Counted from the first letter of the stretch, positions 1,776-61,951 are shown. The stretch: 64,000 nucleotides of DNA from IMGVR_UViG_3300044797_000098:124001-188000, one strand, 5' to 3'. Program-made: numbers and translations. Notes: generated by a model from the sequence alone, not told the origin.

Positions 1776-4700
1776 TTGTAATACTTTCTTGTGCTATTGA
1801 AACCGTATTAGCGACGAAATATTGATTTTCTTGAGCGGTAATCGTTAATACTTGACCACCTGTACCATCGACATTAAAATATACTACGCGAACTCGTTCC
1901 ACGCCATCTACCGATTGTGCTGCTGAAATTAACATAGATGAATTTAACACTCCGCCTAATTGATTTGTATTAATTGTTGATGTAACAGCATTTTTTACAT
2001 TTTGTATAACTATTGCAGCAGAGTTTGTTGAATTAGAATTAATAACTATATTAAGTGTAGCATCTATTAGTAATTCTTTTGCTTCTTTAACCAAAACATC
2101 TGCTGTCACCGGACGAGCTCCTTCAACAGTAAATGTTGTATTTGTTATTAACGAATTATAATTATAACTAATTAATATTCTTTCATTTTGTTTTGGAGCT
2201 AAATAATCATAAAACGCAGTATATCTTGAACCGGTTGCTGGTTGTGTAAAAAATGAAACCGTGAATCGTGCTGATTGTGATGAATTAAATCCGCTTGATG
2301 CATAGAACTTATTTAAGAATGCAAACTTTTTATTAGTGTAGAGAGTACCGTTTTTTGTAAAATATACATTTTCATAATCGCCATCTGTTGCATAATAAAA
2401 TGTAATCATTAATGAATCACCGAGATTTGGCACATTATTTATATTATTAGTCGTTGATGGTAATGTGAATTGTGTATTTTGTAATAATGGATCGCTTATC
2501 ATTTCATTAGCATATAATAAATTATTACTTATCTCTGTACCAAGAACATCATATGTTGCCAATGTGCTTAATACTTGATTTCCCGTTGTAACGCTCACTT
2601 TTTTAAGACTTACAACCCTCGTGATGTATGTGTTTGACGGAATAGTTGCATTAATAGTTAGATTAAGAAATGTTACGAATGCTGACAGTGCATTTTGTGT
2701 CAATCCAGAATTGATTGCCGTAAATACAACATTGGCCACCTGTGTAACTGTTGTACCAGAAGCTGTTATAACACCTGAATTGGCTATTTGATCTGTGACG
2801 GTTATTGACAATTTTGTTGGTGACTGATGTAAGTTTTTATTTCCGAATAGAATGACAATAACTTCGTCTCCCTGAGATGCTAATGCATTTACTGGAAGAT
2901 TTAAAATATTATCTGTTGAATCTATTGTGCCAGATATAGTCCATAGGTCTTTATTATCTGCAACTCTAATAATACTAATTTGTATTGTTTGTAAATTAGC
3001 AATTGCTAACTGTATAGTTAATAAATTATTCGATGTATTTATAGATGTTATATTATAATAACCTTTGTTATTTATATTTACTGTATTTACTAATTGTATT
3101 GATTTTCCAAGTAAATCATCTATTGATGAAAAACTAAATGATATGCTTGAAAAAGTTGCTGTTGAGGAATTGGATGAAACTGATTGTATATATCCGTCTG
3201 TTCCTGATGCTATCGACAATCCAGTTGTATTATCAATTATATTAAAAGATATATTATTTTCAATAATAAAATTATGTATAGGTACGTAAAAATTATTAGT
3301 TGTAAAATTATACGCCAAGTTTTGAAAATCAGTTTTTATGATTTGATTTGTAAAAGTAAATGGCTGAAATCTTCTTATATCATCGGCAAAATATATTACT
3401 AAAACATTATCGCCAACAGATGGAGCATTAAAACCAGAAAATATTAATTGATATTGGGTTCCGGTATTTACAACGGTTCCAGGAAAATCGGTATTCCATA
3501 TTTCTTTACCAGAAACTAAATCTATAACGGATACTATTTGTGATTGTAGCAATGAAAAATCGGAAGATGGAATACTTAATGTTACATAATTTTGGCTTGA
3601 ACCATTAACTTGAATTGTTTGATTTTCTCTTTTTAATGTATTTGAATTTATATTATTTGTTGATCCTATATTTGTATTTAATACATAACCATTTCCAGAT
3701 CTACTAATCGGAAGACTAGTTATTCCGGCAGATAGTAAATCTGGTAATGCAGCCAAATACGTAACATCTAGATATACATATTGTGTTGATGCTGGTACAT
3801 TTGATACCGGAATAGTTATTTGATTAGATGTAAAACTCCCCGTCGAATTAGTAACATTAAATGAATCTTGTTGATTATAGGTTATTGATATTAAATCACC
3901 TACCACCGCCGAAGTATCTGTTGGCAATATTATTGTTGAACTATATTTTAATTGTATTCCAACAACGATACTATTATTAATAATAATTCCATCATTTTGT
4001 GCTGTATTATATATTTCTTGATTAGAATCAGTGAGCCTAATACTCTCTATAGAGTTTATTGGATTATCGATTGGTGATAGGACTACTTGAAGTCTTGTTA
4101 GAAAGTTTGCAACCGTGCCAACAACAACTGTGCCACGACTAAAACTAAAATAGTTTGCAGATATTACAACAGATACTGGATGTTTTACAGTACCAGTAAA
4201 AAGATTACTCGATGAATTTAATGAAAATAATACTCTTTCATTCCTTATAGCATTAGAAATGCCCCAATCAACGCTATCTGAAATTGGTCTTGGATTATTA
4301 TTTAAAAACTTACCATCATAATCACTATATGGATCATAACTATCAATCCAAGTATAATCAACTTGAAGTATATCACTGGAAGACGGTAATGTATTACCGC
4401 TAATCTGTATTTGCCCAGTCGTATTTGTGCTTCCTGTATTGTCTAGATTTTGATTAGTTATCGTATAGGTTTCACCCGTATTTACATTAAATACTCTTGT
4501 AACATTCGTAGCCGGAGTATGAAGTAATTGTATTATAGAGCTATCGGTGCTTGATACAATACTATTTTCACTAAGTATAGATATACTTTGTTGAACCTCT
4601 GGTATATCAATAACATCCGAATATGTTGTAGCGTCTTGTCCGTTAAATTTTGATTTAACTCTATCTTCTTGGAATAAGGATATTTTATTTGATATCCAGT

Positions 4701-5859
4701 GAAACTTATCAAAACCCCAAGGGCTTCCAGCATATACACCGGTATCTTTTATTAACTCATAATTTCCAGATATTCTGCCAAGACTATCTACTGTTTTTGG
4801 AACGAAATTACCGCCACTTAAAGAACCCGTAACTTGTAAAATTGCTTCTACTGGTTGAGCTGGTAAAACTCCGTTTGCTATATCATCAATTCTTTTTTGC
4901 GTGACTGTTTTATTCGCATCCGCTGCAATTTGTCCTAATACAATTATATTTGCGCTATTTGTTGGATCATTATTATTACTTTGATCTATATAAATATATG
5001 TATCTGTAAATTGAGTTAAAATACTACCAAGAATAAGTATATCTACTTTACCACCGGTTCCTTCTGATATAATCGTATAACTACCATCTGAGTTTTCCAC
5101 AACCTGTGTTCCATCCCTTGTCATCAATGGATTACCTGGACCAATTACGACAGCATCAGAAACAGCAGAATTGGACAAAACTAAGTTTTTATATCCGAGA
5201 GCTGTGCCTATATTCGATCCACTAAATACGGCTAATACACGATTTCTAAATGTTGCATCATTTTCTTGATCATTACCACCTGTAAATGGAAATGTATTCG
5301 TAACATTTGACACACCTGGAATGGATGTTTGATTTAATGAGTATTGAGATATATTCCCGGCGCTTCCAGCCGTTGTGGCTTGAACTGAAACCTCAACAGC
5401 ATACTGATCTGTTATATTCAAAAAGCTTAAAGTACTTTGATATTTTGTGGCAATAGATTTATAAAAATTAGCATTTGCTGGATCCACACTAGTACCATTT
5501 AATACAACGAAAGTAGATCCGCTAGTAGATGTTATTAACGAATTAGTGTTTATTGCAATAATAGCTGGAATTGAAGCAAATGTCAATAACGCTGTGCCGG
5601 ATGATTTTGTAGCAACTTTTCTTGTCACACCATAATTTTGTGCTAATTTGTCTAAGTCGCTGCCAGATACCAATCTCAGTGATTGAAGATTTGATATTTT
5701 CCCGAGCTCATCATACAATAGAGCAATTTGTGAGGCCGGAGCATCAACGATTAAATCCCTAGCAACTGTTCCAGGCTTAAGATCTAAATTAGGCTGGGCA
5801 GTATTAAAAAAGTCTAAAAGACTTAATATTAATTCGTTTGTTGACCGAATAGTTACCAT
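1768..5859 (-). CDS. Baseplate J-like wedge protein, greatly extended (1363 aa)
   Basis: N-terminus DLKPGTVARDLIVDAPA...DLDKLAQNYGVTRK...GGNDQENDATFRNR and C-terminal LISAAQSVDGVERV are baseplate-J-like; follows a gp25-like gene. Confidence 0.85.
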   Translation of the reverse strand: MVTIRSTNELILSLLDFFNTAQPNLDLKPGTVARDLIVDAPASQIALLYDELGKISNLQSLRLVSGSDLDKLAQNYGVTRKVATKSSGTALLTFASIPAIIAINTNSLITSTSGSTFVVLNGTSVDPANANFYKSIATKYQSTLSFLNITDQYAVEVSVQATTAGSAGNISQYSLNQTSIPGVSNVTNTFPFTGGNDQENDATFRNRVLAVFSGSNIGTALGYKNLVLSNSAVSDAVVIGPGNPLMTRDGTQVVENSDGSYTIISEGTGGKVDILILGSILTQFTDTYIYIDQSNNNDPTNSANIIVLGQIAADANKTVTQKRIDDIANGVLPAQPVEAILQVTGSLSGGNFVPKTVDSLGRISGNYELIKDTGVYAGSPWGFDKFHWISNKISLFQEDRVKSKFNGQDATTYSDVIDIPEVQQSISILSENSIVSSTDSSIIQLLHTPATNVTRVFNVNTGETYTITNQNLDNTGSTNTTGQIQISGNTLPSSSDILQVDYTWIDSYDPYSDYDGKFLNNNPRPISDSVDWGISNAIRNERVLFSLNSSSNLFTGTVKHPVSVVISANYFSFSRGTVVVGTVANFLTRLQVVLSPIDNPINSIESIRLTDSNQEIYNTAQNDGIIINNSIVVGIQLKYSSTIILPTDTSAVVGDLISITYNQQDSFNVTNSTGSFTSNQITIPVSNVPASTQYVYLDVTYLAALPDLLSAGITSLPISRSGNGYVLNTNIGSTNNINSNTLKRENQTIQVNGSSQNYVTLSIPSSDFSLLQSQIVSVIDLVSGKEIWNTDFPGTVVNTGTQYQLIFSGFNAPSVGDNVLVIYFADDIRRFQPFTFTNQIIKTDFQNLAYNFTTNNFYVPIHNFIIENNISFNIIDNTTGLSIASGTDGYIQSVSSNSSTATFSSISFSFSSIDDLLGKSIQLVNTVNINNKGYYNITSINTSNNLLTIQLAIANLQTIQISIIRVADNKDLWTISGTIDSTDNILNLPVNALASQGDEVIVILFGNKNLHQSPTKLSITVTDQIANSGVITASGTTVTQVANVVFTAINSGLTQNALSAFVTFLNLTINATIPSNTYITRVVSLKKVSVTTGNQVLSTLATYDVLGTEISNNLLYANEMISDPLLQNTQFTLPSTTNNINNVPNLGDSLMITFYYATDGDYENVYFTKNGTLYTNKKFAFLNKFYASSGFNSSQSARFTVSFFTQPATGSRYTAFYDYLAPKQNERILISYNYNSLITNTTFTVEGARPVTADVLVKEAKELLIDATLNIVINSNSTNSAAIVIQNVKNAVTSTINTNQLGGVLNSSMLISAAQSVDGVERVRVVYFNVDGTGGQVLTITAQENQYFVANTVSIAQESITSG

Positions 5860-5868
5860 TATCTACCT

Positions 5869-8014: not shown

Positions 8015-10159
8015 CTAACTCCCGCTATCAATAGTTCCATCCCTAGCTATATCGCCCTCGTCTCTTCTTGGTGCTCCACCCTCTGAACTTGAACTATTAG
8101 ATGAGGATATAGATGGTGAATATACAAATGTATAATTTAATTCATTGACGGAAACTGATGGTGTTTGCGTTATATCTGTTGGGTTATTTAATATACTAAT
8201 ATAGTTATTATCAAATGATACCTTAACTGTTCCATTACCAGGTGTATCACTTAATATTTCTGCCATAAATAGCTGGTATCCGTCATAAGAAAACGGCCCT
8301 ACACTACCTAATGAAACATTAGCCTGTATTTGAGACGCTATTGATGTTGCAACATCTGATGGCAAATTATTTGTCAATGATTGCGAAGAACTTTCATTAA
8401 TTGAAACAAATATAGTTATTGGTTGAGTAATAAATTGAATATTTGTACTTAAATAAAATGAACTTGTATATTGATCATAAGCTGCTGGTATCACCTGTGC
8501 TATTGAACTATTGGTTTGTTGTTGTAGGTTATTTAGTAATCCTAATACTGTTGCTTGAAATAAATTAGTCGATGGAATAGATACACTCTGACTATATACT
8601 GCTATTGCATTTATGATTGCGTCTTGTGTGCCGGCAACATCTGGTAATGTTATATTTGCCAACGCAGCAGAGTTGCCATTGAATTGCGCACCTATTGTAT
8701 TATTAATGAAATCTTTATTAACTGCAACCTCTGGAATACATCCTAATGTTATTAAACTTTCCCCTACCAGGACCTCATGATTGATAGTAAAAGTATATGT
8801 TAAATCTTGAAATAAATATCCATCATTTGGAAAATAAGATCCTTCATTGGCCGGTATGTTAGTTGAATTTTGATGTATAAAAGTATTTAATGGGATTGGT
8901 CTATTTTGAGAATCAACTACTATATCACCATTGTCCTCTGTAACAACCCCACCAATCAAATTTAATGTTCCATTGAATGGGGCAACTAGATCGTTATTAT
9001 ATGACGAAACACCAAGAGTCGGGGGATCTTTAACGATTGCATTCACAATTCGCATATATCTTGGGCCTTTTGGATCTGTTGGATTATAACTAAAATCAGC
9101 TGGAACATAAAAGAATCTAAAACTAATTGTATATGGCGTTGAGTTCGGATCTGTTGTCGTTGTATAATTTGTTCCTCCTGGGAAAAATATTTTCGATGTT
9201 CCAGCAGGTAAATCATATGCTTTAACTATATTGCTGAATGCCTGACTCGTAGAAAGATTGGCGTCATAGAACTGCCAGCTTTCAGATCTTATAGACGATA
9301 TAATTGGAGGAAATGATGCTGGCAATACTAATCCTGAATCTATACCAACTTCATTATAATATAAAAATGTACCAGTGCTACTTATAATATCACTATTATT
9401 CTTGATGAATGCTGGGCATACATCGGGTGTGCAACAAGAACTTGGATTACCTCCACTTGAACTACAAGGAGGAATCCTGAATCCTAAACTAAGGATTGCT
9501 TTTATTATTTGAATGATAGTTGTCAATACACCAAATACTACGAATAGGTTTTGTAATGAGCATAATAAATCGCCTATTTTTTTAACGATTCCTATAATGC
9601 TATCATTATCCAATCTTGGAGCAGCTTTTCCAAGCATATTTAAATTAGCAACTATAACATCAATAATACCAATAATACGAGTTATTAAATATTCTATTAA
9701 GGATAGAATTAGTAATAATAAGGACATTATCATTATTGGTATTGCAAATGCTGGAAAAATAGAAAGAAACTCTGGTATGCAATTACGAAACAGATTACTT
9801 ATAGCTCCACCAAGTGTAAATGGATTCAATAATGAGCACAAAACCTCTATTATACATAAAATTAAATTTAATACTGGTAAGAAAAACTTATATAACATTA
9901 AGAATGGACTGAACTTTTCTAATAAACTATTAACCGCACCATATACATCAATAATAACATTGGGCTCCATTTTTGGTTTTAATGTACCGGGTGGCAATAT
10001 AAAACTCAGTTGATTAAATATTGATGTAAGATCTTCCACTGGTGATGGAGCGAACGGAATATTATAGCTAGGCAATGCAACAGCAAACCCGTTAGATCCT
10101 GGAAATGTCCCAGAATTAGGCGGTATAACATTTGTTTCTGGTAAAGGGGTACAAGGCAT
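8015..10159 (-). CDS. Baseplate-region protein with N-terminal hydrophobic helices and Cys clusters (714 aa)
   Basis: Long hydrophobic segments in aa ~85-225, motif PPCSSSGGNPSSCCTPDVCP; directly downstream of the spike gene. Confidence 0.55.
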   Translation of the reverse strand: MPCTPLPETNVIPPNSGTFPGSNGFAVALPSYNIPFAPSPVEDLTSIFNQLSFILPPGTLKPKMEPNVIIDVYGAVNSLLEKFSPFLMLYKFFLPVLNLILCIIEVLCSLLNPFTLGGAISNLFRNCIPEFLSIFPAFAIPIMIMSLLLLILSLIEYLITRIIGIIDVIVANLNMLGKAAPRLDNDSIIGIVKKIGDLLCSLQNLFVVFGVLTTIIQIIKAILSLGFRIPPCSSSGGNPSSCCTPDVCPAFIKNNSDIISSTGTFLYYNEVGIDSGLVLPASFPPIISSIRSESWQFYDANLSTSQAFSNIVKAYDLPAGTSKIFFPGGTNYTTTTDPNSTPYTISFRFFYVPADFSYNPTDPKGPRYMRIVNAIVKDPPTLGVSSYNNDLVAPFNGTLNLIGGVVTEDNGDIVVDSQNRPIPLNTFIHQNSTNIPANEGSYFPNDGYLFQDLTYTFTINHEVLVGESLITLGCIPEVAVNKDFINNTIGAQFNGNSAALANITLPDVAGTQDAIINAIAVYSQSVSIPSTNLFQATVLGLLNNLQQQTNSSIAQVIPAAYDQYTSSFYLSTNIQFITQPITIFVSINESSSQSLTNNLPSDVATSIASQIQANVSLGSVGPFSYDGYQLFMAEILSDTPGNGTVKVSFDNNYISILNNPTDITQTPSVSVNELNYTFVYSPSISSSNSSSSEGGAPRRDEGDIARDGTIDSGS

Positions 10160-10206: not shown

Positions 10207-12228
10207 TTATCTGATAGGACCAGCAGCAGGATCTTCAATTACTGGTCGTCCATTCAATACTATATTTGGGCTATCAAATTCAATAGACGCAGGGCTACGA
10301 AATAACATTTTTCTCGCATAACAGGTCATGCTACCAGGCGTAGTAATTGTTAGCCCATCATCATCTATTCTCAGTATTGTCATTTCCTTTTGAGAATTGA
10401 ATACACGAATATCCACAACACCGGCTACCCAGCCGGTATTTGAGTTTTGAAACCGTGTGGTTTCCGCTGGAACCGTATTACCTCCAACTTGTATTATGAC
10501 CTCACCATCCATATTTGCTGCAAGACTTATATTCCTTAAATCCCTACCAACATTTGCGACTATTCCACCCTGAGTATCTAACCATAATGATTGACGATCT
10601 ACCGTATTTGCACCAATATTAATTTCTACTGATCCATCGAAATTTAAACTACCACTTCTGCCACCAGCATTAGCATTTACACCATTAGTAATTATCTGCG
10701 TACTAATGATTGTTGGAATAGGTGGGACTTGTCCTGCTGCCAATGTTGTAGTCGTAACATATTCAACTGGGGTATAAAACGTATTAGTCTGTATGGTACT
10801 GCAAGTATCTGCAATATTATGATATACGGTTCCGTGTTGTATATATATCGGGTTATTTTTACCTGAAAACCTATCTATTGGCCCAAATGAATTACCAATA
10901 TCATCTAATAGAGATATTGCAGGATCATTAATAAATGATTCTGCTAATACATCTTTATATAATGAATTAAACACTAAATCATTAGTATTATTTGATTGAG
11001 GGTTAGGTGAAACTGTTGAATAATTTTCATATCTGATATTTAATGGTATATTGCCTGTTTCGCTGGATGCTGGTACATTTAGCTTGAATTGACCTTCTTT
11101 ATCAATATCAAAAAAGAATCTACTACGAGCACGAGCATAATTATCTTTATTATTTACATTTGGAGGACCAGAACCTTTTGTTTCTTTTCTTGCATTTATC
11201 TCAAAATGATATGCGAGACTTTTTCTCTCTTGCCTTTTTATTTGTTGATACGCATTTTTAAAAGTATCCTGTTCGCTTGCAGTGGATTTAATATTAAATG
11301 ATGATAGATTATTAACACCTAATGGAACTATATCTCTATTTAAATCTATCACATTTCCATATAAATCTACTACTGTTCCTTTTATTTCTTCTATTAAATA
11401 ATTTGGTGATGTTAAACTTAAACTCAATGCATCGGCTCGTCCAGCTCTCCTATCAGTTATGGTTGAGTAATTTGGAAAAACTCCTGTTTTATAGAACTCT
11501 AATTCAATATCATCAGAATATACATTGGCAGATTCTTCATATTCATATACAACTTCTCTTTTTTCTACTCTTGCAGGATTTCTTACAGCTGTTCCAGAAT
11601 TAAAAATCTTTGCATCTGCAATCGGATCCATTCCAATGGCAATTAATGTATCATCGTATGCTGTGTCAAACTCTCTTAAAAATGAAGGATAGTTGGTGGA
11701 TGGTTGTTTATCTCTATATATAATACCATTTATCTCTCTTGAACCTTGTCCTAAATAATAGGACTGATCAAAATTATTGAGATATACCTTTCTAGTTATA
11801 TCAAATGTCGCTGAGTTTTCTGTTTCACCTATAACAATAACATCATCATTAAGATTTATTGCAACATCATTATTTGATTGTATAGTTATTCCGCCTCTTG
11901 TTAAATCCGGTATGCTTATTTGTGTAGACGATTGTGTCAATCTTGCTACTGGGTCTCTTGCTAAAAATGCAACTATCGCATAATTACTTGTTCCTTCAAC
12001 TTGACTGACATAAACAGGCGTTCCTTCTGCTGGAAAACCACCAATAAATCCGCCACCAGCTGAAAGATATGGGATTGGTAATTGGGCTAATACATCTCTG
12101 GCTCCATCATTATTTAACTGTGAATCGGGCCTGAATGTAACATATGCTGACATCGTGCTAAGATCAATTTTCGTGATCGTAGCCAATCGTGTCATTCCAG
12201 ATGGTTTAAATATGGGTCCTTGTGCCAT
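10207..12228 (-). CDS. Baseplate central spike / gpV-gp5-like protein (673 aa)
   Basis: N-terminal OB-fold-like segment (ATITKID...GGFIGGFPAEGTPVYV) and C-terminal short beta-strand repeats; follows the hub gene. Confidence 0.6.
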   Translation of the reverse strand: MAQGPIFKPSGMTRLATITKIDLSTMSAYVTFRPDSQLNNDGARDVLAQLPIPYLSAGGGFIGGFPAEGTPVYVSQVEGTSNYAIVAFLARDPVARLTQSSTQISIPDLTRGGITIQSNNDVAINLNDDVIVIGETENSATFDITRKVYLNNFDQSYYLGQGSREINGIIYRDKQPSTNYPSFLREFDTAYDDTLIAIGMDPIADAKIFNSGTAVRNPARVEKREVVYEYEESANVYSDDIELEFYKTGVFPNYSTITDRRAGRADALSLSLTSPNYLIEEIKGTVVDLYGNVIDLNRDIVPLGVNNLSSFNIKSTASEQDTFKNAYQQIKRQERKSLAYHFEINARKETKGSGPPNVNNKDNYARARSRFFFDIDKEGQFKLNVPASSETGNIPLNIRYENYSTVSPNPQSNNTNDLVFNSLYKDVLAESFINDPAISLLDDIGNSFGPIDRFSGKNNPIYIQHGTVYHNIADTCSTIQTNTFYTPVEYVTTTTLAAGQVPPIPTIISTQIITNGVNANAGGRSGSLNFDGSVEINIGANTVDRQSLWLDTQGGIVANVGRDLRNISLAANMDGEVIIQVGGNTVPAETTRFQNSNTGWVAGVVDIRVFNSQKEMTILRIDDDGLTITTPGSMTCYARKMLFRSPASIEFDSPNIVLNGRPVIEDPAAGPIR

Positions 12229-17153: not shown

Positions 17154-17170
17154 TTATATTTCCTCTTACA

Positions 17171-20418: not shown

Positions 20419-20424
20419 CTAAAA

Positions 20425-21437: not shown

Positions 21438-21484
21438 AATGGCTTTCTCCTATTAATATGTGGTTTTATTAGAATACGGAATAT

Positions 21485-21535
21485 TAAAACACAAATCCCG
21501 TAATATACAATATATCACGGGAAATTTATGTTTTA
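21485..21535 (-). terminator. Hairpin after tail tube gene (probable terminator/attenuator)
   Basis: Imperfect inverted repeat centred on CCCGTGATATA-TTG-TATATTACGGG followed by ATTTGTGTTTT on the minus strand. Confidence 0.55.
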
Positions 21536-49250: not shown

Positions 49251-49257
49251 TTATTCT

Positions 49258-49587: not shown

Positions 49588-49602
49588 AGTAGCTCCCTAA
49601 TT

Positions 49603-50469: not shown

Positions 50470-50519
50470 CTACTGCCTCTAATTTAGACTATATCAATAT
50501 ACAATAAAACTGATAGAAA

Positions 50520-51380
50520 TTATGGCTTGTATTGTAATTTTGCTTGATCATATCCTTGCTGCAAAAGCAAGCGCATCGTAGCGTTATCAAATGATAATGA
50601 ACTATTTGGCAAATCTGATGATGGTCGAATGATTTTGACATTCAAAAACTTCTTATCTGGTTGAAGCCCGGCAGATACCAATCTATTGTACATAAACATC
50701 ATTTTGATATCTGATTGTGTCATCTGATCTGTCATATAATCAAAACAACGAAGACCATATGTTACAACATCAACATCATTGAAAGATGATGACGGCATTT
50801 TTGGCCCACATAAAACTATATCTAAATCTGTTGCGCCCATTGCAATTGCTTCATTGATTGGAGTTGAATGACGAACTCCACCATCTGTATATTTGATTCC
50901 ATTAATTACGATAGGAATTAATCCCATTGGAAATGAACTCGACGCAAGAATGCCATCTAAAAAGTACCCATCGTCTTGTGTAAATGTATGATAGTTTCCT
51001 GTGCAGATTTCTGTTGCTGAAACTGCGACTTTATTGCCGGACGCACGTATTTTATTGAGGTTAATGTTATTATGAACTAAATCTATAAGCGGTTGTGAAT
51101 TATATATTGAATCCGACCATAATCCTTTTGCAACATTCCATGGACACCAGTTTTTCTTTACGGTTGAGTCTTGTATATTATACCATAGATTATATAGCGC
51201 TTGATATCCTAATTTCTGATCTGCTGGTGCATACTGAGCCATCCAAGATGCATTTAGCGCACCAACTGAAACACCGGTAAAACAATCATATGTATTACCA
51301 AGATCCTCGAATAGATATTTGAGGCACCCAACTTGAAAACTTCCAGCTGAACCACCACCCGATAAAACTAATGCTCGCAT
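50520..51380 (-). CDS. Patatin-like phospholipase (286 aa)
   Basis: LVLSGGGSAG, GVSVG, SSSFP, YTDGG. Confidence 0.95.
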   Translation of the reverse strand: MRALVLSGGGSAGSFQVGCLKYLFEDLGNTYDCFTGVSVGALNASWMAQYAPADQKLGYQALYNLWYNIQDSTVKKNWCPWNVAKGLWSDSIYNSQPLIDLVHNNINLNKIRASGNKVAVSATEICTGNYHTFTQDDGYFLDGILASSSFPMGLIPIVINGIKYTDGGVRHSTPINEAIAMGATDLDIVLCGPKMPSSSFNDVDVVTYGLRCFDYMTDQMTQSDIKMMFMYNRLVSAGLQPDKKFLNVKIIRPSSDLPNSSLSFDNATMRLLLQQGYDQAKLQYKP

Positions 51381-51417
51381 ATATACTCCTTGTAATTATA
51401 TAATTATATGCGTGTGA

Positions 51418-52398
51418 TTATGTATTATGCGCCCGTGCCACGGTGAGTACCCAAGCAATATCCAACCCTGTGTGTCCAGAATTAGTAACAATAACTTCAT
51501 GTTGCCATTGTGGCAAAGCTTTTCGTGGTATCAGTGCAGGTATAATTAAATCTAATGTACGAGATCCAAACATTTGTAATGATGTTACAGGATGAGTTAA
51601 TGGTATTTGAATAGTATATAAATCATATCCACCAAGCCTATTAAGGTTTGGAGTTATTGTTCCATATCCTATCCCATTAGAAGCATTAGTCCAGTCCCAA
51701 AAACCAGTACCGGTTAAATTTGGTACCGGTACAGCAGTAGCAAGATTTATGGAAGAATTAGTATTTACTCCGGGAATAATTAAAACGTTACCCGGGCCGG
51801 TCAAATTGACATTACCGGTTCCACTAACAGTTGTTACAGTTGTGGCGGGAGCATTCATCCAATAATCAATTTTATCTCCAAAGACCGCTCCAGTATAAGA
51901 GATTTGTCCACCCGCTAAATAGAGATAATCATTATGTTGCCACGTGATAGTAGTTGTAGCGGTGTAACCGTCATCACTAGAATAGTAAAATGGCGTTCCA
52001 TTACCATTACCAAGAGTAGGATCATCACCAGCACCAATTATTGTCATCTGCACGGTTGATGGGAATAGTGTTGGTAGAGTATTCAATCTACCATCGGAAG
52101 AGCGAGGAATGATTGATGAGTTGGCTGTTGACATATAATTGGTCAAAAAATCGGTAGTATCAAGATCGTTTTGTGTTTGGGAATAATCTAGATCAAATTG
52201 ATACCCAGTAGACATAGTCGAAAAAACAAGCTGTGTTTTGTATGCAATATTTTGATCGAAGGAAAATACGCAATACCCGTCCACACCAATAACATACTGA
52301 ACAGCTAAGCTTTTATTGATAATTATTTGCTTAAAATCTAACCATTTTAAAGAAACTACGGCTGGACTATTGAATTGGATTTGTTGAGCATATGACAT
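51418..52398 (-). CDS. Hypothetical virion protein (326 aa)
   Basis: Beta/Thr/Gly-rich; two DGY motifs; within decoration/fibre block. Confidence 0.55.
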   Translation of the reverse strand: MSYAQQIQFNSPAVVSLKWLDFKQIIINKSLAVQYVIGVDGYCVFSFDQNIAYKTQLVFSTMSTGYQFDLDYSQTQNDLDTTDFLTNYMSTANSSIIPRSSDGRLNTLPTLFPSTVQMTIIGAGDDPTLGNGNGTPFYYSSDDGYTATTTITWQHNDYLYLAGGQISYTGAVFGDKIDYWMNAPATTVTTVSGTGNVNLTGPGNVLIIPGVNTNSSINLATAVPVPNLTGTGFWDWTNASNGIGYGTITPNLNRLGGYDLYTIQIPLTHPVTSLQMFGSRTLDLIIPALIPRKALPQWQHEVIVTNSGHTGLDIAWVLTVARAHNT

Positions 52399-56828: not shown

Positions 56829-58145
56829 TCATGTCCACTCGGTAACACGTAATGATCCCACGGCCGTTGTCCAAATTGCATTACACTGACCAGTATAGTT
56901 TAGATTTAAATCCGTATATGAATTTGGAAGTAATCTAATCGTATACGCAGTATTTGATGCAGCAGTTGCTGAAATAGCAAGAAAGCATACAGACGAACTA
57001 TCATTATAGAACGCTGCACTTATCCTATTCGCATTAGATGCAAGAGCAGTCACGCTTGAAGTCGAAGCAGCAACGCTTGTCATTGTACCAACTGTTGATT
57101 TATCTACAGTTAATGTACCTGATACTGGAATTGCAGTACCACCAGAAATACCTTGTATTGTTACAACGCCAGTTGCTGGTGTACCAGCTGTACCTGTGCC
57201 AGTTACTGGTTGAGTAACACTTGAACCATCAACACGTAAATTACCAACGGTTGTTAGTGACAGTGCACTTAATTGTCCTGTTGTATATGATGGAGCGGAA
57301 GTTGTTACAGCAGCACCGATGAATGTTACGTCGCTTGTTGGTGTAGTCGCATTGACTGGATACACGCCATCAATACGAAGCAGACCAGCTGTTGTTAGTG
57401 ACAGCGGATCCATTTGTCCATTAGTATAAGCTGGAGCGGATGTATTAACTAAAGCACCCATATAAGTTGCTGAAGATGGAGGAGAAGCAGCTGTTGCCGA
57501 AACTGAAGAGTTATTATAGTTACCAGTACCAGCGTTGGCTGTAACAGTACCAGAAACTGGTTGTGTGACAGCAGAACCATCTACGCGTAATGCACCAGCT
57601 GTAGTGAGTGATAGAGCACTCATCTGACCAGTTGTATAAGTTGGAGATGATGTTGTTACAGAACCACCAACAAATGCTAAATCTGTTGTTGCAGTTGGAG
57701 CAGTTTGTCCTGGATATACACCGTCAATACGTAATTGACCAGATGTAGTAAGTGACAAAGAATTCATAGTATTATTTGAATACGCAGGAGCAGCAGTTGT
57801 TACAGATCCACCCATAAGCTCTGCCGATGATGGAGCAGCAGAACCCGTGCTTGAAACTGCACCGCTATTAAATACACCAGAAGATGTATTGACTAGTACC
57901 GAGGTCATACCTGAGATACCTTGGATTGTTAGTACACCGGTTGCTGCTGAACCGGCAGTACCTGAGCCAGCGACTAACAAGTCGCCAACATTGTTAACTG
58001 CAACAAGTTGTGCTAATCCAGTTGAGTAATTATACCCATCAATTAGTAAACCTGGTTGAGTAGACCCTACTGAGGATCCGTTAGGGGCGCTAATCTCAAC
58101 GCCCAACGATGAATAAATTATTGACGCTGGTGATTCTGAAGACAT
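56829..58145 (-). CDS. Repetitive fibre/decoration protein (438 aa), paralogous to 52874..56689
   Basis: Shared N-terminus MSS.SP...Y...G.E.S; four repeats G..VTT.AP.YT.GQM..LSLTT.G.LR.DG. Confidence 0.7.
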   Translation of the reverse strand: MSSESPASIIYSSLGVEISAPNGSSVGSTQPGLLIDGYNYSTGLAQLVAVNNVGDLLVAGSGTAGSAATGVLTIQGISGMTSVLVNTSSGVFNSGAVSSTGSAAPSSAELMGGSVTTAAPAYSNNTMNSLSLTTSGQLRIDGVYPGQTAPTATTDLAFVGGSVTTSSPTYTTGQMSALSLTTAGALRVDGSAVTQPVSGTVTANAGTGNYNNSSVSATAASPPSSATYMGALVNTSAPAYTNGQMDPLSLTTAGLLRIDGVYPVNATTPTSDVTFIGAAVTTSAPSYTTGQLSALSLTTVGNLRVDGSSVTQPVTGTGTAGTPATGVVTIQGISGGTAIPVSGTLTVDKSTVGTMTSVAASTSSVTALASNANRISAAFYNDSSSVCFLAISATAASNTAYTIRLLPNSYTDLNLNYTGQCNAIWTTAVGSLRVTEWT

Positions 58146-58212
58146 GTTAGACCTTTCGGTAGATCGTTGTTATTTGTTGGTCTTACAATTATATACAATA
58201 ATATTACATATT

Positions 58213-58962
58213 TTATAAATTAATATGTCTTGTACGAGAAGTTTCGAATGGACCGCTATAGACTATAGTATCTGTTAAACTTTCTATAATTGTCACACCA
58301 TCTGTTCCATACATATTCCAAGTTATATTTATTGGAAATGGGATACTCCAAGTAATTATTTTTTCAATAATCTTTTTAGTTTTTGTATTATCATTATACC
58401 AAACTATATTAGTTGGAAACGGATTAGCAAATGGGGTTACTTCTTTATACGCATTAACTGCGAATAAATCGCCTGGACCTTCACTAATAAAATGGATTAA
58501 CTGCCGTAGTGTTTCGTGACTTGTTGGCTGTACAGCATTTTGATCAATATCTTTAATCGCCCCTTGAACATTGGTAGCATCAGTAATTGTTAAACCGGTT
58601 GGATTAAAACCTACTAATCCAGCTCCTACTGGAAACATAAAATCTACATACCCACCAGTTGAATTATTTATTGATTCAACAACTGTAAAAACAGTATCAC
58701 TTACTATACTAGCAATAGTATAATATCCATCCGCTCCAGATGAACCAAAAATATAAGCAATATCTCCTGCTTGAGCCGGATGATCAAATGCTGGTAATAA
58801 AAGACCTTCACCATCAGAAATAGGACTTACTACAACAGTTTGAGTGATGGATGTTGTACTAGCACTAGACACAGAGCTTAGATATACAGAATAACCATCA
58901 GAGAAAAGCTCCTGAGGTGATATTATATCTGAACGAAATATATCACTTTTTCTAATAGGCAT
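58213..58962 (-). CDS. Hypothetical virion protein (249 aa)
   Basis: AGDIAYIFGS..ADGYYTIASIVSDT beta module; ATNVQGAIKDI fibre-type motif. Confidence 0.55.
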   Translation of the reverse strand: MPIRKSDIFRSDIISPQELFSDGYSVYLSSVSSASTTSITQTVVVSPISDGEGLLLPAFDHPAQAGDIAYIFGSSGADGYYTIASIVSDTVFTVVESINNSTGGYVDFMFPVGAGLVGFNPTGLTITDATNVQGAIKDIDQNAVQPTSHETLRQLIHFISEGPGDLFAVNAYKEVTPFANPFPTNIVWYNDNTKTKKIIEKIITWSIPFPINITWNMYGTDGVTIIESLTDTIVYSGPFETSRTRHINL

Positions 58963-59043
58963 TATTATCCTGCATCAATAAATATATGATAGTAGCCATT
59001 TGATCTACTAAAATATGATTTTATTGACATTGCAATAAAACTA

Positions 59044-59463
59044 TTATTTTTTCTTTGATTTTTGTTTCTTTACTTCCACAACTTCGTCCGAAGCATTATT
59101 TTCCTTATCTTTCTTTAGAACTTCGGCCTCTTTCTCTGAATGTTCCGCTTTCATAACGAAAGCATTAATAACATTATATACGATGCTTCCCATCGAAGCA
59201 AACGCACCAGCTTGCCCATCCAATGTCGATGCTTGCTTTCTTAAATTTTCTGCTTGGGAAACACATTGTTGTCTATTTCGTTCGGCATCATTCATAACTT
59301 GAATTAATAATGCTTCAATTATATCTTTATTATCTATATTAAAAACACTATGTGATACAGCATCTGCAACGCGTTTTCGTAATTTTAGAATCTCTTCTCC
59401 ATAACTCATATTATATTTCCTTTCTTTTTTTCTTGTGCAATATGTTGCGCTACTATCAAGCAA
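59044..59463 (-). CDS. Coiled-coil hypothetical protein (true start probably MSYGEE at 59409)
   Basis: ATGA overlap with upstream stop at 59406-59409; helical composition. Confidence 0.6.
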   Translation of the reverse strand: MLDSSATYCTRKKERKYNMSYGEEILKLRKRVADAVSHSVFNIDNKDIIEALLIQVMNDAERNRQQCVSQAENLRKQASTLDGQAGAFASMGSIVYNVINAFVMKAEHSEKEAEVLKKDKENNASDEVVEVKKQKSKKK

Positions 59464-59636
59464 GGCTCACACACTACTAAATTATCTATATCACTACCAC
59501 TAACAATATAAAATTTAGTTGGTTCTTCTGGTAAGTCTGGTCCATTACGACGGAACATTTTTGGAGCTTTATGTCCAGACGAACACCAATGATTAAACGG
59601 TGCTGGAATTTCTCTATATGTTAAATCTGCTTTCAT
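59406..59636 (-). CDS. Small Cys/His protein, possibly Zn-binding (76 aa)
   Basis: WCSSGH...VCEPC; SD AAGGA. Confidence 0.6.
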   Translation of the reverse strand: MKADLTYREIPAPFNHWCSSGHKAPKMFRRNGPDLPEEPTKFYIVSGSDIDNLVVCEPCLIVAQHIAQEKKKGNII

Positions 59637-59644
59637 ATATTCCT

Positions 59645-59681
59645 TAAAATAAAAAGAGAATAGGTTTCTCTATTCTCTTTT
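59645..59681 (-). terminator. Intrinsic terminator-like hairpin
   Basis: AAAAGAGAATAG-AGAAAC-CTATTCTCTTTT then TATTTT, downstream of the 500-aa gene. Confidence 0.65.
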
Positions 59682-59703
59682 ATATATCAGAACTTATTTA
59701 TTT

Positions 59704-61206
59704 TTAGACTATGAAATAGTCTATGATATCACCAGATCTTTGTGTAGCGAAGAATGTTACCGATGTAGTTGATGTTTCAGTATAATCAGCACTTTGAGTT
59801 ATAAGTCCTGGATGACGAAGCACTCCACGAGTGTATAAATACAAGCCACGACCATTGTTAGTTCCATCTAATACATATGTTAATCCACCTGGAAGCGTGT
59901 GTGGCGTTCCTGGTGATAGATCGGCTCCAAGCAACTCAATAGTACGAGTTATTGTACTTGCAGAAATTGCATTTGATAGCGCCTGTAATGATGCCGTTAT
60001 TGTTTGACCGCTTGTTAGAATTGGTCCGGTATATGTCTCATTACCAATTTGACTATTTAGTGTATTGAGTGCCTGAACAACTGTTGGAGTTGCATTTGGC
60101 AAGAAGTAAAATGGGAAGTATTGAGAAGTATTGTTTACTAACCCAGCAAGACTGTTATAGCCATCTGGAATACCAGTTGCACTTACGAGGTCATTAATCT
60201 CATTTAGATTTGAAGCATCTGTTAAAATACCAAGAGCAGGTACAGTTCTAAATGCATTTACATCTAGAAGATCAAGTCGTTCACTATAACCATATAACAT
60301 ATTTACTGTTAATGATTGACCAGATTCCCAAGTGTATGGTGTGTTCGTTGTTACGAAACTATCTGGGAATGGAGATGAATAGAAGTGAACTTCAACCGAA
60401 TTTGGTGAAGTAGACGCGCCAGCATATGTAACACCGAAGATTCTTTCACCAGCATGAGCTCCAGAAAGAACAACCATCTCATCACCGGTATTATAACCGT
60501 CAACTATGTGTACATAGCATGATGCCCAATCACCAGTAAATGGTGCAGCATCAAAACATGGAACACCAGTTTGATTTACAGTATCTGCATGTTTGAAATT
60601 GCCAGCAGATGTGAGAGTTACTTGTGTATAACCATCTTGAACGGCAACACCAAATATTCCACGATTTACGTTATATGCAACGGCATCTGTAGTTTTTGTT
60701 GCAATGTTTGATAGATTTGCTGGAACGTTAGTGCCAACAGCTGTTGGTCGTTGATATGTTGGGATTGGTGCATCGTAACCAACACCCTTGATTGCAGCGC
60801 GGTCTGTACGTTCGTAGTTAAGATCATCTTGTAGACTGTATGGATTTCGTTCTGTCCAGGTTATTGCTCCGTTATTTGTATCTCCTGCTACGGCATTTGG
60901 ATTTGATACTGTGACCGATGTGCCTGATATAAAAGAATCGATTAGGAATGTTCCGTTGTTTCCGGAGCTTGCTGCACCGGATATTGTTAGAAAATGTCCA
61001 ACCGATGTGGCTGTCATACCACTTAGACCAGTAATAGTTGCATCCCCGGCGCTCACAGTAGTGATACTGGCAGCCGAACCAGATTGTGCAAATATGCCAA
61101 CGCCAAGAAAATTGGACTCATCGGCAAGTACCATATTTGATGTTTGAAATAACGAACCAGCTATATCTAAAGCTTGGTCAAGTGCATTAAGTCTATATGA
61201 AGCCAT
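59704..61206 (-). CDS. Virion structural/decoration protein (500 aa)
   Basis: VGHFLTISGA...NNGTFLI beta module; three DGY; C-terminal LYLYTRGVL...DYTETSTTSVTF...GDII module; SD AAGGA. Confidence 0.6.
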   Translation of the reverse strand: MASYRLNALDQALDIAGSLFQTSNMVLADESNFLGVGIFAQSGSAASITTVSAGDATITGLSGMTATSVGHFLTISGAASSGNNGTFLIDSFISGTSVTVSNPNAVAGDTNNGAITWTERNPYSLQDDLNYERTDRAAIKGVGYDAPIPTYQRPTAVGTNVPANLSNIATKTTDAVAYNVNRGIFGVAVQDGYTQVTLTSAGNFKHADTVNQTGVPCFDAAPFTGDWASCYVHIVDGYNTGDEMVVLSGAHAGERIFGVTYAGASTSPNSVEVHFYSSPFPDSFVTTNTPYTWESGQSLTVNMLYGYSERLDLLDVNAFRTVPALGILTDASNLNEINDLVSATGIPDGYNSLAGLVNNTSQYFPFYFLPNATPTVVQALNTLNSQIGNETYTGPILTSGQTITASLQALSNAISASTITRTIELLGADLSPGTPHTLPGGLTYVLDGTNNGRGLYLYTRGVLRHPGLITQSADYTETSTTSVTFFATQRSGDIIDYFIV

Positions 61207-61285
61207 TGCTTTCCTTGTTGATTATAAAATTGATATGATCTTTCTTACTCAATATCAAATTATTACCCATATAAATAAAAAAATA

Positions 61286-61951
61286 TTATGGCGCCTTAAT
61301 TACATAAGTAGCTTCAATAATACTCCTATTATATTGTGGTGTAAAACTTATGAATGTAATTGTATCATATCCAGTTCCAACACCACCGGATTCAGATATT
61401 AAATAATCAATCCCGTATTTCATGCCATGACCATTATGTGAAACATAAATATGAAACTCATTATTATTATAAATACCATCAATGAACTTATCAGAATTAG
61501 GAGTTGTAAAAACTCTATTGGTACCATTTATTGCACCAACTAATGCTTGGCGCTGTCTAAATAGGTAAGTAATATATCCGTCACCCCCGCCACCACCAGC
61601 ATTTATGGCGTCCACTACTTCCTGTGTTAATTCTGGAAAATCTACACTAAGACCATTTACTATTCCAGCTGATTGAAGAAATGCCTTTTGCGTTGCATTA
61701 AATTGCAATAGATCAATATCACTACATAAAACAATTATATCACGACATAATATTTTATGTTTTATTTCTCCTTTTAATAGCGATGCTCTAATATCATCTT
61801 CCGCTACACCAGGGATCTTAAGCAGATCTCGAGTACGACCATGATGTATTGGATAGTGGAATATATGAATTAATTTTTTAGGATGAGTGATATTCTGCAC
61901 TACGAAGCAGTTTGGATTTCTAGACCCTGGCGCAAAACTATCCATTCCCAT
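61286..61951 (-). CDS. Virion structural protein (221 aa)
   Basis: C-terminal GAINGTNRVFT...VSHNG...GIDY...TITF module typical of phage structural proteins. Confidence 0.6.
   Translation of the reverse strand: MGMDSFAPGSRNPNCFVVQNITHPKKLIHIFHYPIHHGRTRDLLKIPGVAEDDIRASLLKGEIKHKILCRDIIVLCSDIDLLQFNATQKAFLQSAGIVNGLSVDFPELTQEVVDAINAGGGGGDGYITYLFRQRQALVGAINGTNRVFTTPNSDKFIDGIYNNNEFHIYVSHNGHGMKYGIDYLISESGGVGTGYDTITFISFTPQYNRSIIEATYVIKAP

What the first reader, a model, noticed from the sequence alone, without database searches (positions are those of the whole stretch)
3190..61582. Virion-wide Asp-Gly-Tyr (DGY) tag: candidate undescribed modification or docking system
Seen: manual count gives 33 DGY tripeptides in 19 proteins: baseplate J x1, 714-aa x2, sheath x2, terminator-like x1, Zn-finger x2, 365-aa x1, 1639-aa x2, 131-aa x3, tailspike x1, 535-aa neck x5, 306-aa neck x1, 654-aa x1, 187-aa x1, patatin at 50520 x1, 326-aa x2, 438-aa x1, 249-aa x2, 500-aa x3, 221-aa x1. 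With assumed frequencies D~6%, G~7.5%, Y~4% over ~20,000 residues, only about 3-4 are expected. About a quarter of all DG dipeptides here are followed by Tyr. All four Gly, both Asp and both Tyr codons are used (GACGGATAT, GATGGTTAT, GATGGGTAC, GATGGCTAT, GACGGTTAC), so selection acts on the protein, not the DNA. Position -2 is often I/V/L/F, which suits an exposed beta-turn. DGY is absent from the tube, tape measure, tube initiator, hub, spike, chaperones and all six endonucleases. Paralog pairs differ at the site (438-aa LIDGYN vs 1271-aa IAAGSD; patatin QDDGYF vs QTSDDF), suggesting independent gains. Caveats: the baseplate-J site and one sheath site are homologous, and the 1271-aa fibre has none. 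Known: Tyr O-glycosylation occurs on some bacterial S-layers, some actinophage virions are glycosylated by phage enzymes, and Asp-Gly readily forms isoaspartate. Inference: DGY is a sequon for a phage-encoded modifying enzyme, or a docking site for a coat/decoration factor on the particle surface.
Basis: partly seen in the sequence, partly recalled or inferred. Interest (0 to 1): 0.9.

Follow-up and report, generated by a model that had tools for sequence, protein, structure and literature searches.

The report
Asp-Gly-Tyr tag on huge-phage tails
The tail, baseplate and fibre proteins of a worldwide group of very large phages carry the three-residue motif Asp-Gly-Tyr about 11 to 17 times more often than chance; the motif keeps being re-created in exposed loops, and its genes sit next to a conserved sugar-transfer gene cluster, so it may be an undescribed attachment site for sugars on the phage tail.

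Summary
The window (part of a 406-kb uncultivated phage contig) has 33 DGY in 19 proteins against 3.2 expected. DGY is the most over-represented of all 8000 tripeptides by about 16 orders of magnitude.

- **Protein level:** 33 of 35 GAYGGNTAY matches are in frame, and codon use is close to background.
- **Specificity:** DGF and NGY are about 1.1x, EGY 0.26x, DSY 0.28x.
- **Tail only:** the tail block has 43 DGY against 3.8 expected. Other genes of the same genome have 3 against 2.85.
- **Not generic:** T4 tail proteins, an Eggerthella phage and 375,000 aa of cellular proteins show no enrichment.
- **Clade-wide:** in 159 related loci the fibre side has 1851 DGY against 118 expected, and downstream genes are about 1.3x.
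- **Evolution:** sites are conserved among close relatives but turn over at long range, with at least 103 gains or losses in one fibre family. They lie in loops and form tandem arrays in some relatives.
- **Linked genes:** a glycosyltransferase and sugar-nucleotide cassette lies downstream of the DGY-richest genes in 121 of 126 loci.

My best explanation is a sequon for tail glycosylation by phage enzymes. This is inferred, not shown.

The parts
3190..61582 (-). Span holding the 33 in-frame DGY codon triplets (GAYGGNTAY) in 19 tail-block proteins
   Evidence: 33 of 35 motif matches are in frame on the coding strand. 3.2 DGY are expected from composition.
1768..5859 (-). 1363-aa baseplate-J-like protein, DGY at residue 888
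   Evidence: Pfam Baseplate_J (weak) in the precomputed table. Site listed. The context is homologous to sheath site 417.
8015..10159 (-). 714-aa tail or baseplate protein of unknown family, DGY at 446 and 626
   Evidence: No Pfam or PHROG hit.
22183..24966 (-). 927-aa tail sheath, DGY at 59 and 417. Both lie outside the conserved sheath core (residues 703-921).
   Evidence: PHROG 23 'tail sheath' matches residues 703-921 only. Sites. Relatives carry DGY at other sheath positions (145 and 525 in L007).
25069..27202 (-). Three DGY-bearing proteins: 263 aa (1 DGY), 93 aa (2 DGY, one being the C-terminal three residues) and 365 aa (1 DGY, in DGYHVDG)
   Evidence: no Pfam family.
27203..32122 (-). 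1639-aa protein, DGY at 279 and 624. Its distant orthologue in L009 has five DGY at other positions.
33446..33841 (-). 131-aa protein with a cluster of three DGY (VYDGYHVDGYHLIVNDGY)
33850..36522 (-). 890-aa protein, DGY at 78
37319..38926 (-). 535-aa protein with five DGY, including the back-to-back DGYDGY; weak fn3 match at 21-92
40907..41827 (-). 306-aa protein, DGY at 116
45147..47111 (-). 654-aa fibre-like protein, DGY at 468. The 85%-identical relative has a second DGY where the window has DGT.
48687..52398 (-). 187-aa protein (1 DGY), patatin-like phospholipase at 50520-51380 (1 DGY) and 326-aa protein (2 DGY). The paralogous patatin at 49603-50469 has none.
56829..61951 (-). 438-aa (1), 249-aa (2), 500-aa (3) and 221-aa (1) DGY-bearing proteins
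   Evidence: No Pfam hit on record.
10207..22168 (-). Run of tail proteins with no DGY: 673 aa, 1641 aa, 295 aa (tube-initiator-like), 786 aa (tape measure), 102 aa, 220 aa and 208 aa
   Evidence: The 1641-aa protein has 0 DGY where a share of 4.1 would be expected (P 0.016).
1..1775 (-). C-terminal 591 aa of a 2286-aa fibre-like protein. The full protein has 5 DGY, all in the part outside the window, including the DGYADGY mini-array. The ~1000-aa baseplate protein and the glycosyltransferase cassette follow downstream, at contig positions below 124001.

Best explanation
DGY is a short linear recognition motif kept by selection in exposed loops of the tail, neck, baseplate and fibre proteins of this clade of huge phages. 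The most likely reader is a phage-encoded glycosyltransferase. The cassette lies directly after the fibre genes on the same strand: one GT-B (GT1/GT4-type) enzyme, two GT-A (GT2-type) enzymes and a nucleotide-sugar dehydratase/epimerase. I propose it is made with the late genes and attaches a sugar or short glycan to the tyrosine hydroxyl of DGY in the cytoplasm, during or after folding. Asp at -2 and Gly at -1 would form the sequon, and Pro, Lys and Arg are not tolerated just after it. The outcome would be a tail and fibre surface studded with glycans.

**Shown:** the enrichment, its residue specificity, its restriction to tail proteins, its spread across the clade, its loop location, purifying selection with repeated gains, and the conserved gene linkage.

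**Inferred:** that the motif is modified at all, that Tyr is the acceptor, that these particular enzymes do it, and what the glycan is for (shielding, solubility or host binding).
For: 1. **Size and specificity.** The window has 33 DGY against 3.2 expected and DGY ranks first of 8000 tripeptides. In 218 unique fibre-side proteins DGY is 14.2x, while DGF is 1.13x, DGW 0.26x, NGY 1.14x, EGY 0.26x, DAY 0.64x, DSY 0.28x and YGD 1.65x. All three residues and their order matter, which fits a specific reader better than a turn propensity.
2. **Lineage-specific.** T4 tail proteins have 6 against 2.5 expected and phage LE2-3 has 1 against 1.7. 75 cellular loci have 50 against 48.1. Universal folding rules cannot give 15x in one clade and 1x elsewhere.
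3. **Substrate class.** The tail block has 43 against 3.8 expected. All other genes seen in the same genome have 3 against 2.85 in 20,578 aa.
4. **Selection.** 20 of 21 and 11 of 11 sites are conserved in close relatives, against 65% and 48% for other tripeptides. At long range, 43 alignment columns carry DGY and at least 103 gains or losses are needed among 51 fibres.
5. **Exposure.** In a confident model (pLDDT 85, pTM 0.80), 25 of 43 DGY columns are in loops and only 3 are in strand interiors (p 1.3e-4). The busiest columns lie in low-confidence flexible loops and the C-terminal tail.
6. **Autonomous unit.** One homologous spot of the ~2200-aa protein holds tandem arrays, with up to 7 copies seen in the loci inspected. 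33% of sites have another DGY within 10 aa.
7. **Sequon-like flanks.** Pro is 0.1x at +1 and Lys 0.2-0.3x from +1 to +6. Lys plus Arg fall to 2-4% at +1 to +6 against a 6.9% background, on the C-terminal side only.
8. **Linkage.** The GT1-type gene follows the DGY-richest genes in 121 of 126 loci with enough DNA. The gap is at most 100 nt in 37 of them. The cassette genes themselves have no DGY.
Against: - No modification has been observed, and no DGY or tyrosine sequon is known (one search found no paper).
- Glycosyltransferases are common in large phages, where they can modify DNA or host polysaccharides (reviewed in PMC12619734).
- The association is universal in the clade, so it carries no presence/absence information.
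- One phage (L100/L134) has 24 DGY but no GT1-type gene within 7-9.5 kb downstream.
- The cassette contains a helix-anchored all-beta protein with no fold match. This could point to a membrane-located process instead.
- The nearest solved relatives of the enzymes are generic glycosyltransferases.
- About 270 kb of the genome was not examined and may encode a different writer.
Confidence: 0.4

Rival explanations
1. DGY is a docking or adhesion motif that is not modified. It would be bound by another phage protein (a decoration or assembly factor) or by a host-surface ligand. The exposed Tyr would act as the contact residue, as in antibody binding loops.
For: The same evidence for a specific reader applies: residue specificity, tail restriction, loop location, repeated gains and tandem arrays. 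The motif is commonest in the distal, variable half of a peripheral baseplate protein.
Against: - No candidate partner was found.
- The Ig-repeat protein next to the fibre genes occurs only in the window's subclade.
- Generic Tyr-rich stickiness would not require the exact order D-G-Y (YGD 1.65x, GYD 1.34x, DYG 0.73x).
- It gives no role to the conserved glycosyltransferase cassette.
Confidence: 0.2
2. DGY is the target of a different covalent chemistry, written by an enzyme elsewhere in the unexamined genome or by the host. Candidates are tyrosine sulfation, phosphorylation or nucleotidylation, tyrosine cross-linking, or isoaspartate formation at Asp-Gly.
For: The acidic, Lys/Arg-poor, Gly-containing surroundings of the Tyr resemble what is generally known of tyrosine sulfation sites (my knowledge, not tested). 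A weak tyrosine-phosphatase-like protein lies in the head-side block. Only about 137 kb of 406 kb was examined.
Against: No kinase, sulfotransferase or similar enzyme was found in the 137 kb examined. The phosphatase match is below the Pfam threshold. Isoaspartate chemistry would not require Tyr.
Confidence: 0.15
3. DGY is a purely structural micro-motif, such as a calcium-binding loop, a tyrosine-corner-like lock or a turn. It would be favoured by the folds used in these fibre proteins, with no reader or writer.
For: A subset of sites sits in dockerin/EF-hand-type loops (for example DVDGDGYITTND). Hydrophobic residues are enriched at -2 and -3. DG is a common turn dipeptide, and DGT is also mildly enriched (about 2x).
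Against: - Only 4% of 1455 unique contexts are EF-hand-like, and none is in the window.
- NGY and DGF are not enriched.
- There is no enrichment in T4 fibres or in cellular proteins.
- Sites are not tied to homologous positions or to one domain.
- Tandem DGYxDGYx arrays and a C-terminal DGY do not fit a fold-locking role.
Confidence: 0.12
4. The enrichment is an artefact of composition, of paralogous repeats, or of a DNA-level process (a selected DNA motif or slippage).
For: Tandem arrays could grow by slippage. GAC is slightly over-used at the Asp position (p 0.02).
Against: - It survives per-protein shuffles and a Markov model.
- The DNA motif is enriched only in frame.
- All Gly codons are used in background proportions.
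- The contexts are unrelated to one another.
- Gains occur by single substitutions from DGx or xGY at many columns.
Confidence: 0.02

Closest known systems
Mycobacteriophage virion glycosylation (Freeman et al. 2023, as summarised in PMC12619734)
   Same: Phage-encoded glycosyltransferases modify the phage's own structural proteins in the cytoplasm. The enzymes' genes lie with the structural genes (the gene arrangement is from my knowledge).
   Different: In those phages the glycans are reported at the C-termini of the capsid and tail-tube subunits of siphoviruses. Here the tube-like proteins (208 and 220 aa, unannotated) and the capsid lack the motif, and the candidate sites are internal DGY loops in sheath, baseplate, neck and fibre proteins of huge myoviruses. 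No tripeptide sequon is described there. I could not read the original paper.
Bacterial short glycosylation sequons with an obligatory acidic residue: Campylobacter D/E-X-N-X-S/T and Bacteroidota D-(S/T)-(A/I/L/V/M/T) (my knowledge)
   Same: A 3-5-residue sequon with Asp close to the acceptor, Pro excluded next to it, use of exposed flexible loops, and many substrate proteins.
   Different: Those acceptors are Asn or Ser/Thr, and the transfer is done en bloc in the periplasm by a membrane oligosaccharyltransferase. Here the candidate acceptor is Tyr and the substrates assemble in the cytoplasm.
Tyrosine O-glycosylation of S-layer proteins (Paenibacillus alvei, Thermoanaerobacter; PMC2943079)
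   Same: A glycan is O-linked to tyrosine on a repetitive surface structure.
   Different: It is a few sites per protein and is transferred outside the membrane. The review was searched for 'consensus sequence' and 'sequon' and contains neither term. Those glycans are built by a cellular gene cluster, not a phage one.
Chlorovirus PBCV-1 capsid glycosylation by virus-encoded enzymes (my knowledge; the PBCV-1 enzyme B736L is a weak sequence match of the GT1-type protein)
   Same: The virus encodes its own glycosylation machinery and uses atypical sites on its structural proteins.
   Different: It is a eukaryotic virus with N-linked glycans on the major capsid protein, and it has no DGY motif.
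EF-hand / dockerin DxDxDG calcium loops
   Same: About 4% of DGY sites occupy positions 5-7 of such loops in the ~1000-aa baseplate protein.
   Different: 96% of sites, and all 33 in the window, lack the upstream Asp/Asn pattern.

Membership tests
Enzyme-recognised glycosylation sequon | Short motif over-represented in, and restricted to, one class of substrate proteins | tested here: met
   Tail block 43 against 3.8 expected; other genes of the genome 3 against 2.85. Across the clade, the fibre side is 15.7x and downstream genes 1.3x.
Enzyme-recognised glycosylation sequon | Strict residue requirements, including exclusion of Pro next to the acceptor | tested here: met
   DGY 14.2x against DGF 1.13x, NGY 1.14x, EGY 0.26x and DSY 0.28x. 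Pro is 0.1x at +1.
Enzyme-recognised glycosylation sequon | Sites are accessible on the folded or folding protein | tested here: inconclusive
   25 of 43 columns are in loops and 3 in strand interiors of a confident AlphaFold model.
Enzyme-recognised glycosylation sequon | A cognate transferase is encoded and expressed with the substrates | tested here: inconclusive
   A GT1/GT4-type gene, two GT2-type genes and a sugar dehydratase/epimerase follow the fibre genes in 121 of 126 loci. Protein specificity of these enzymes was not shown, and expression timing is inferred only from strand and short gaps.
Enzyme-recognised glycosylation sequon | The residue carries a glycan | not testable with these tools
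   This needs mass spectrometry or glycan staining of virions.
EF-hand / DxDxDG calcium-binding loop | Asp/Asn at loop positions 1 and 3 before the DG, and an acidic residue at position 12 | tested here: not met
   64 of 1455 unique contexts (4%) match, and 0 of 33 in the window.
Generic beta-turn / hairpin propensity | Equivalent turn formers (Asn-Gly) and equivalent strand starters (Phe, Trp, Val) are similarly favoured, and the effect appears in any beta-rich protein | tested here: not met
   NGY 1.14x, DGF 1.13x, DGW 0.26x. T4 tail and fibre proteins have 6 against 2.5 expected.
Single repeated domain or paralogous repeat | Sequence contexts of the sites are homologous to each other | tested here: not met
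   Among 19 window proteins, only the baseplate-J and sheath proteins are paralogous. Apart from overlapping neighbours, the contexts are unrelated.

The most novel reading that the evidence does not exclude
A globally distributed clade of huge phages uses a dedicated, previously unknown protein-tagging system. A three-residue tyrosine sequon (Asp-Gly-Tyr) is scattered over and continually re-evolved in the exposed loops of the contractile tail, baseplate and fibres. It is written by a phage-encoded glycosylation cassette, giving a tyrosine-linked glycan coat on a phage tail. This would be the first defined sequon for phage virion glycosylation and the first tyrosine sequon in any system.
Probability: 0.3. 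Interest if true: 0.9.

Novelty: new variant of a known kind. Interest (0 to 1): 0.8.

Why it matters
If DGY marks glycan attachment, it gives a sequence-readable map of where a phage decorates its own tail. It would also provide a minimal tyrosine sequon with its enzymes, which could be useful for glyco-engineering. And it would extend phage virion glycosylation from a few actinophages to an abundant, environmentally widespread group of huge phages.

Even if the mechanism is different, a three-residue motif that is 11-17 times enriched is a rare and clean signature. It is restricted to one structural module, conserved in the short term and repeatedly gained in the long term across more than 150 loci. 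That pattern points to an unknown reader or writer, and it makes the question directly testable by mass spectrometry on any cultivated member.

Tried and rejected
- **Deposited phage relatives:** only one weak sheath hit, to an Eggerthella phage.
- **PHROGs and Pfam on DGY-bearing proteins:** almost no families.
- **Literature search for 'DGY motif':** no papers.
- **The 337-aa cassette protein:** no sequence match among solved structures. A good model (pLDDT 85.7) gave no significant fold match, only a weak porin-like resemblance. It is not an evident enzyme.
- **Solved relatives of the GT1-type and GT2-type proteins:** generic matches only, so they say nothing about protein specificity.
- **Search for an outgroup (fibre relatives lacking DGY or the cassette):** failed in both viral and metagenome scans. 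Every sizeable locus is enriched (minimum 2.4x) and nearly all carry the GT1-type gene.
- **Alternative genetic code:** checked as a cause of my failed fibre detection and rejected; my search pattern was simply too narrow.
- **Cellular homologues of the GT1-type gene:** their neighbourhoods show no DGY enrichment.
- **Walking 137 kb of the contig:** no kinase or sulfotransferase found.
- **Freeman et al. 2023:** the paper is not held.
- **Moraphage lineage (PMC12619734):** it has four core glycosyltransferase groups, but I could not establish that it is the same clade.

Full report
**Source and gene content**

The window is positions 124001-188000 of a 406,470-bp uncultivated viral contig (JGI 3300044797 Ga0480565_0000007, also IMGVR_UViG_3300044797_000098). 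It is 97% coding, almost entirely on the minus strand, and reads in the standard code.

Family searches recognise these genes:
- a tail sheath (22183-24966);
- a tape measure (18058-20418) and a weak tube-initiator-like protein (17171-18058);
- a baseplate-J-like protein (1768-5859);
- two GIY-YIG endonucleases, three LAGLIDADG endonucleases and one DUF4379 zinc-finger gene;
- two patatin-like phospholipases and a J-domain protein.

Most other proteins have no known family. No deposited phage is close; the best is 32% identity over 19% of the sheath.

Yes.
- From the real composition, 3.2 DGY are expected (3.0 with per-protein composition, 8.3 under a first-order Markov model).
- The Poisson probabilities are 2.5e-22 and 7e-11.
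- DGY ranks first of all tripeptides under both models. The runner-up has p about 6e-6 under composition and about 3e-4 under the Markov model.
- After DG, Tyr follows 33 times and Phe 3 times. Before GY, Asp occurs 33 times, Asn 3 and Glu 2.

The signal acts on the protein.
- GAYGGNTAY occurs 35 times against 6.5 expected, and 33 of these are the in-frame coding sites.
- Codon choice at the sites matches the background for Gly and Tyr. There is only a slight GAC excess for Asp.

The contexts are not one repeated domain. Only the baseplate-J and sheath sites, and a 9-residue DGYHVDG match, are related to each other.

**Where in the genome?**

I walked the contig outward with exact-protein look-ups and covered positions 88.6-225.4 kb.
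- In the tail, neck, baseplate and fibre block (54 genes, 23,414 aa), DGY occurs 43 times against 3.8 expected (11.3x, p 3e-30, rank 1). 27% of DG dipeptides there are followed by Tyr.
- All other genes have 3 against 2.85 expected in 20,578 aa. These include the capsid, terminase, lysis genes, helicases, primase, methyltransferase, tubulin and the glycosyltransferases.
- So the tag belongs to the tail, not to the whole virion or proteome. The only head-side carrier is a 235-aa protein next to the capsid gene.
- Inside the tail block, a run of proteins has none: the tape measure, the tube-initiator-like protein, two small unannotated proteins downstream of the sheath gene, and a 1641-aa protein. 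The 1641-aa zero is individually unlikely (P 0.016).
- In the sheath, both sites lie outside the conserved core matched by the sheath profile (residues 703-921).

**Is it generic?**

No.
- T4 tail, baseplate and fibre proteins have 6 against 2.5 expected (rank 191). The Eggerthella phage tail has 1 against 1.7.
- 75 cellular loci around related GT4-type genes have 50 against 48.1 in 374,505 aa.

**Relatives**

- Sheath relatives at 93%, 84%, 54% and 44% identity all have DGY as their top tripeptide. For example, L009 has 10 against 1.0 expected.
- Profile scans with a ~1000-aa baseplate protein found 79 viral and 80 metagenome loci. They come from soils, sediments, fresh water, sea water and microbial mats, on contigs up to 480 kb. 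The protein lies just outside the window, and its best fold match is a phi812 baseplate chain (E 8e-6).
- Pooled, the fibre side has 1851 DGY against 118 expected (15.7x). The per-locus median is 14.9x and the minimum 2.4x. Genes downstream have 67 against 53. The two collections overlap, so these loci are not all independent.
- In 218 unique fibre-side proteins the specificity is extreme: DGY 14.2x, DGF 1.13x, DGW 0.26x, NGY 1.14x, EGY 0.26x, DAY 0.64x, DSY 0.28x, YGD 1.65x.
- Pro is nearly absent at +1 (0.1x). Lys and Arg are depleted from +1 to +6 but not upstream. Hydrophobic residues are favoured at -2 and -3.

**Evolutionary behaviour**

- Among close relatives the sites are conserved more than other tripeptides: 20 of 21 against 65% (p 1.4e-3), and 11 of 11 against 48% (p 3e-4).
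- At long range they turn over. Against L009, 1 site is shared, 3 are only in the window and at least 6 only in the relative.
- In a 51-sequence alignment of the baseplate protein, 43 columns carry DGY in at least one sequence. At least 103 changes are needed on a tree built from the DGY-free N-terminal half.
- The usual alternatives at those columns are DGT, DGI, DGV, NGY, DDY or an indel.
- At one homologous spot of the ~2200-aa protein the motif forms arrays, with up to 7 copies seen in the loci inspected. L027 has DGYVDGYADGYVDGYDGYSDGY, and the window phage has DGYADGY.
- One third of all sites have another DGY within 10 residues. Only 4% fit an EF-hand or dockerin calcium loop, and none of those is in the window.

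**Structure**

An AlphaFold model of the baseplate protein, built from the 51-sequence alignment, is confident (pLDDT 85.4, pTM 0.80). I projected the DGY columns on its secondary structure.
- 25 columns fall in loops, 9 in helices or helix ends (the dockerin-like segments) and 6 at strand edges.
- Only 3 fall in strand interiors, although 31% of the model is strand (p 1.3e-4).
- The most frequently used columns lie in low-confidence flexible loops and the C-terminal tail.

**The linked genes**

Directly after the fibre genes, on the same strand, lies a cassette:
- a GT1/GT4-type glycosyltransferase (369 aa);
- a GT2-type enzyme (221 aa);
- a 337-aa helix-anchored all-beta protein with no fold match;
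- a second GT2-type enzyme (279 aa);
- a nucleotide-sugar dehydratase/epimerase, interrupted here by an intein.

The order [~2200-aa protein][~1000-aa protein][GT1-type] holds in every diverged locus inspected. The GT1-type gene is found in 121 of 126 loci with more than 3 kb of downstream DNA. In 37 loci the gap to it is at most 100 nt. None of the cassette proteins carries DGY.

There are exceptions. L043 and L061 keep the other cassette genes but not the GT1-type gene. L100/L134 has 24 DGY but different downstream genes, with only a GT-B-like fragment.

In cellular genomes the only close relatives of the GT1-type gene are two phage-like contigs binned into MAGs, and both are DGY-rich.

**Interpretation**

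A three-residue motif that is strictly specified, lineage-specific and confined to one structural module cannot be a folding preference. Add loop location, short-term purifying selection and repeated gains, and it needs a lineage-specific reader or writer.

The only lineage-specific, conserved and physically linked enzymes I found are the glycosyltransferases. I therefore favour a glycosylation sequon with Tyr as acceptor (confidence about 0.4).

Parallels from general knowledge are the obligatory Asp near the acceptor in the Campylobacter and Bacteroidota sequons, Pro exclusion next to acceptors, tyrosine-linked S-layer glycans (PMC2943079) and glycosylated mycobacteriophage virions (as summarised in PMC12619734).

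The weaknesses are plain:
- No modification has been observed.
- Phage glycosyltransferases often act on DNA or on host polysaccharide.
- The association is universal, so it is uninformative as a correlation.
- One cassette member looks membrane-anchored.
- About 270 kb of the genome was not examined.

The rivals are an unmodified docking or adhesion motif (0.2), another tyrosine or aspartate chemistry written elsewhere (0.15), a purely structural motif (0.12) and an artefact (0.02).

**Novelty**

I found no description of this motif. Virion glycosylation by phage enzymes is known, so I rate this as a new variant of a known kind. If the motif is instead a docking system, it would be further from anything known.

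Noticed in passing
L017:11851-13938 (contig about 105.2-107.3 kb, outside the window): The nucleotide-sugar dehydratase/epimerase of the cassette is 695 aa because an intein (Pfam Intein_splicing, residues 138-490) interrupts it. Relatives have 290-330-aa versions without the intein.
   Followed up: partly
window 32527-33216, 36540-37289, 39443-40462, 41875-42738(+), 47449-48651, 62723-63778: Six homing-endonuclease-type genes (two GIY-YIG, three LAGLIDADG, one DUF4379 zinc-finger) are scattered through the tail gene block. None carries DGY.
   Followed up: partly
window 49603-50469 and 50520-51380: Two tandem patatin-like phospholipase genes sit inside the tail block. Only the second carries DGY; a paralogue in the 93%-class relative has SDD at the aligned position.
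   Followed up: no
window 40528-40905 (+) and L269:1506-2477: A small J-domain protein is encoded on the opposite strand in the middle of the tail block. A full-length DnaJ homologue is encoded about 40 kb away.
   Followed up: no
window 33446-33841 and 26105-27202: The 131-aa protein has VYDGYHVDGYHLIVNDGY, and the 365-aa protein shares DGYHVDG. The alternating His, Asp and Tyr could form a metal site.
   Followed up: no
window 25864-26145: A 93-aa ORF overlaps the start of the 365-aa gene. It has an internal repeat (NIINxIxDGY) and ends in DGY followed by the stop codon. Whether it is a real gene was not tested.
   Followed up: no
L017:4520-8146 (outside the window): A 1208-aa protein made of ten Big_3_5 Ig-like repeats lies between the baseplate protein and the cassette, only in the window's subclade. 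It has no DGY.
   Followed up: partly
L017:13983-15395: A TubZ-like tubulin gene directly follows the cassette and is conserved there in many relatives.
   Followed up: no
L013:3744-4508: A 254-aa protein in the head-side block has weak, sub-threshold matches to tyrosine-phosphatase families.
   Followed up: no
L012:7925-8632: A 235-aa protein next to the major capsid gene is the only head-side protein with DGY (two copies). It could be a head decoration protein.
   Followed up: no
L191, L192: Contigs of this phage clade are filed inside MAGs labelled Gammaproteobacteria and Thioploca. This is either mis-binning or a weak hint at the host.
   Followed up: no
L148, and L100/L134: L148 is the only fibre locus with little DGY (2 against 0.85 expected), and its contig ends right after the fibre. 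L100/L134 is among the richest (24 DGY) but lacks the adjacent GT1-type gene.
   Followed up: partly
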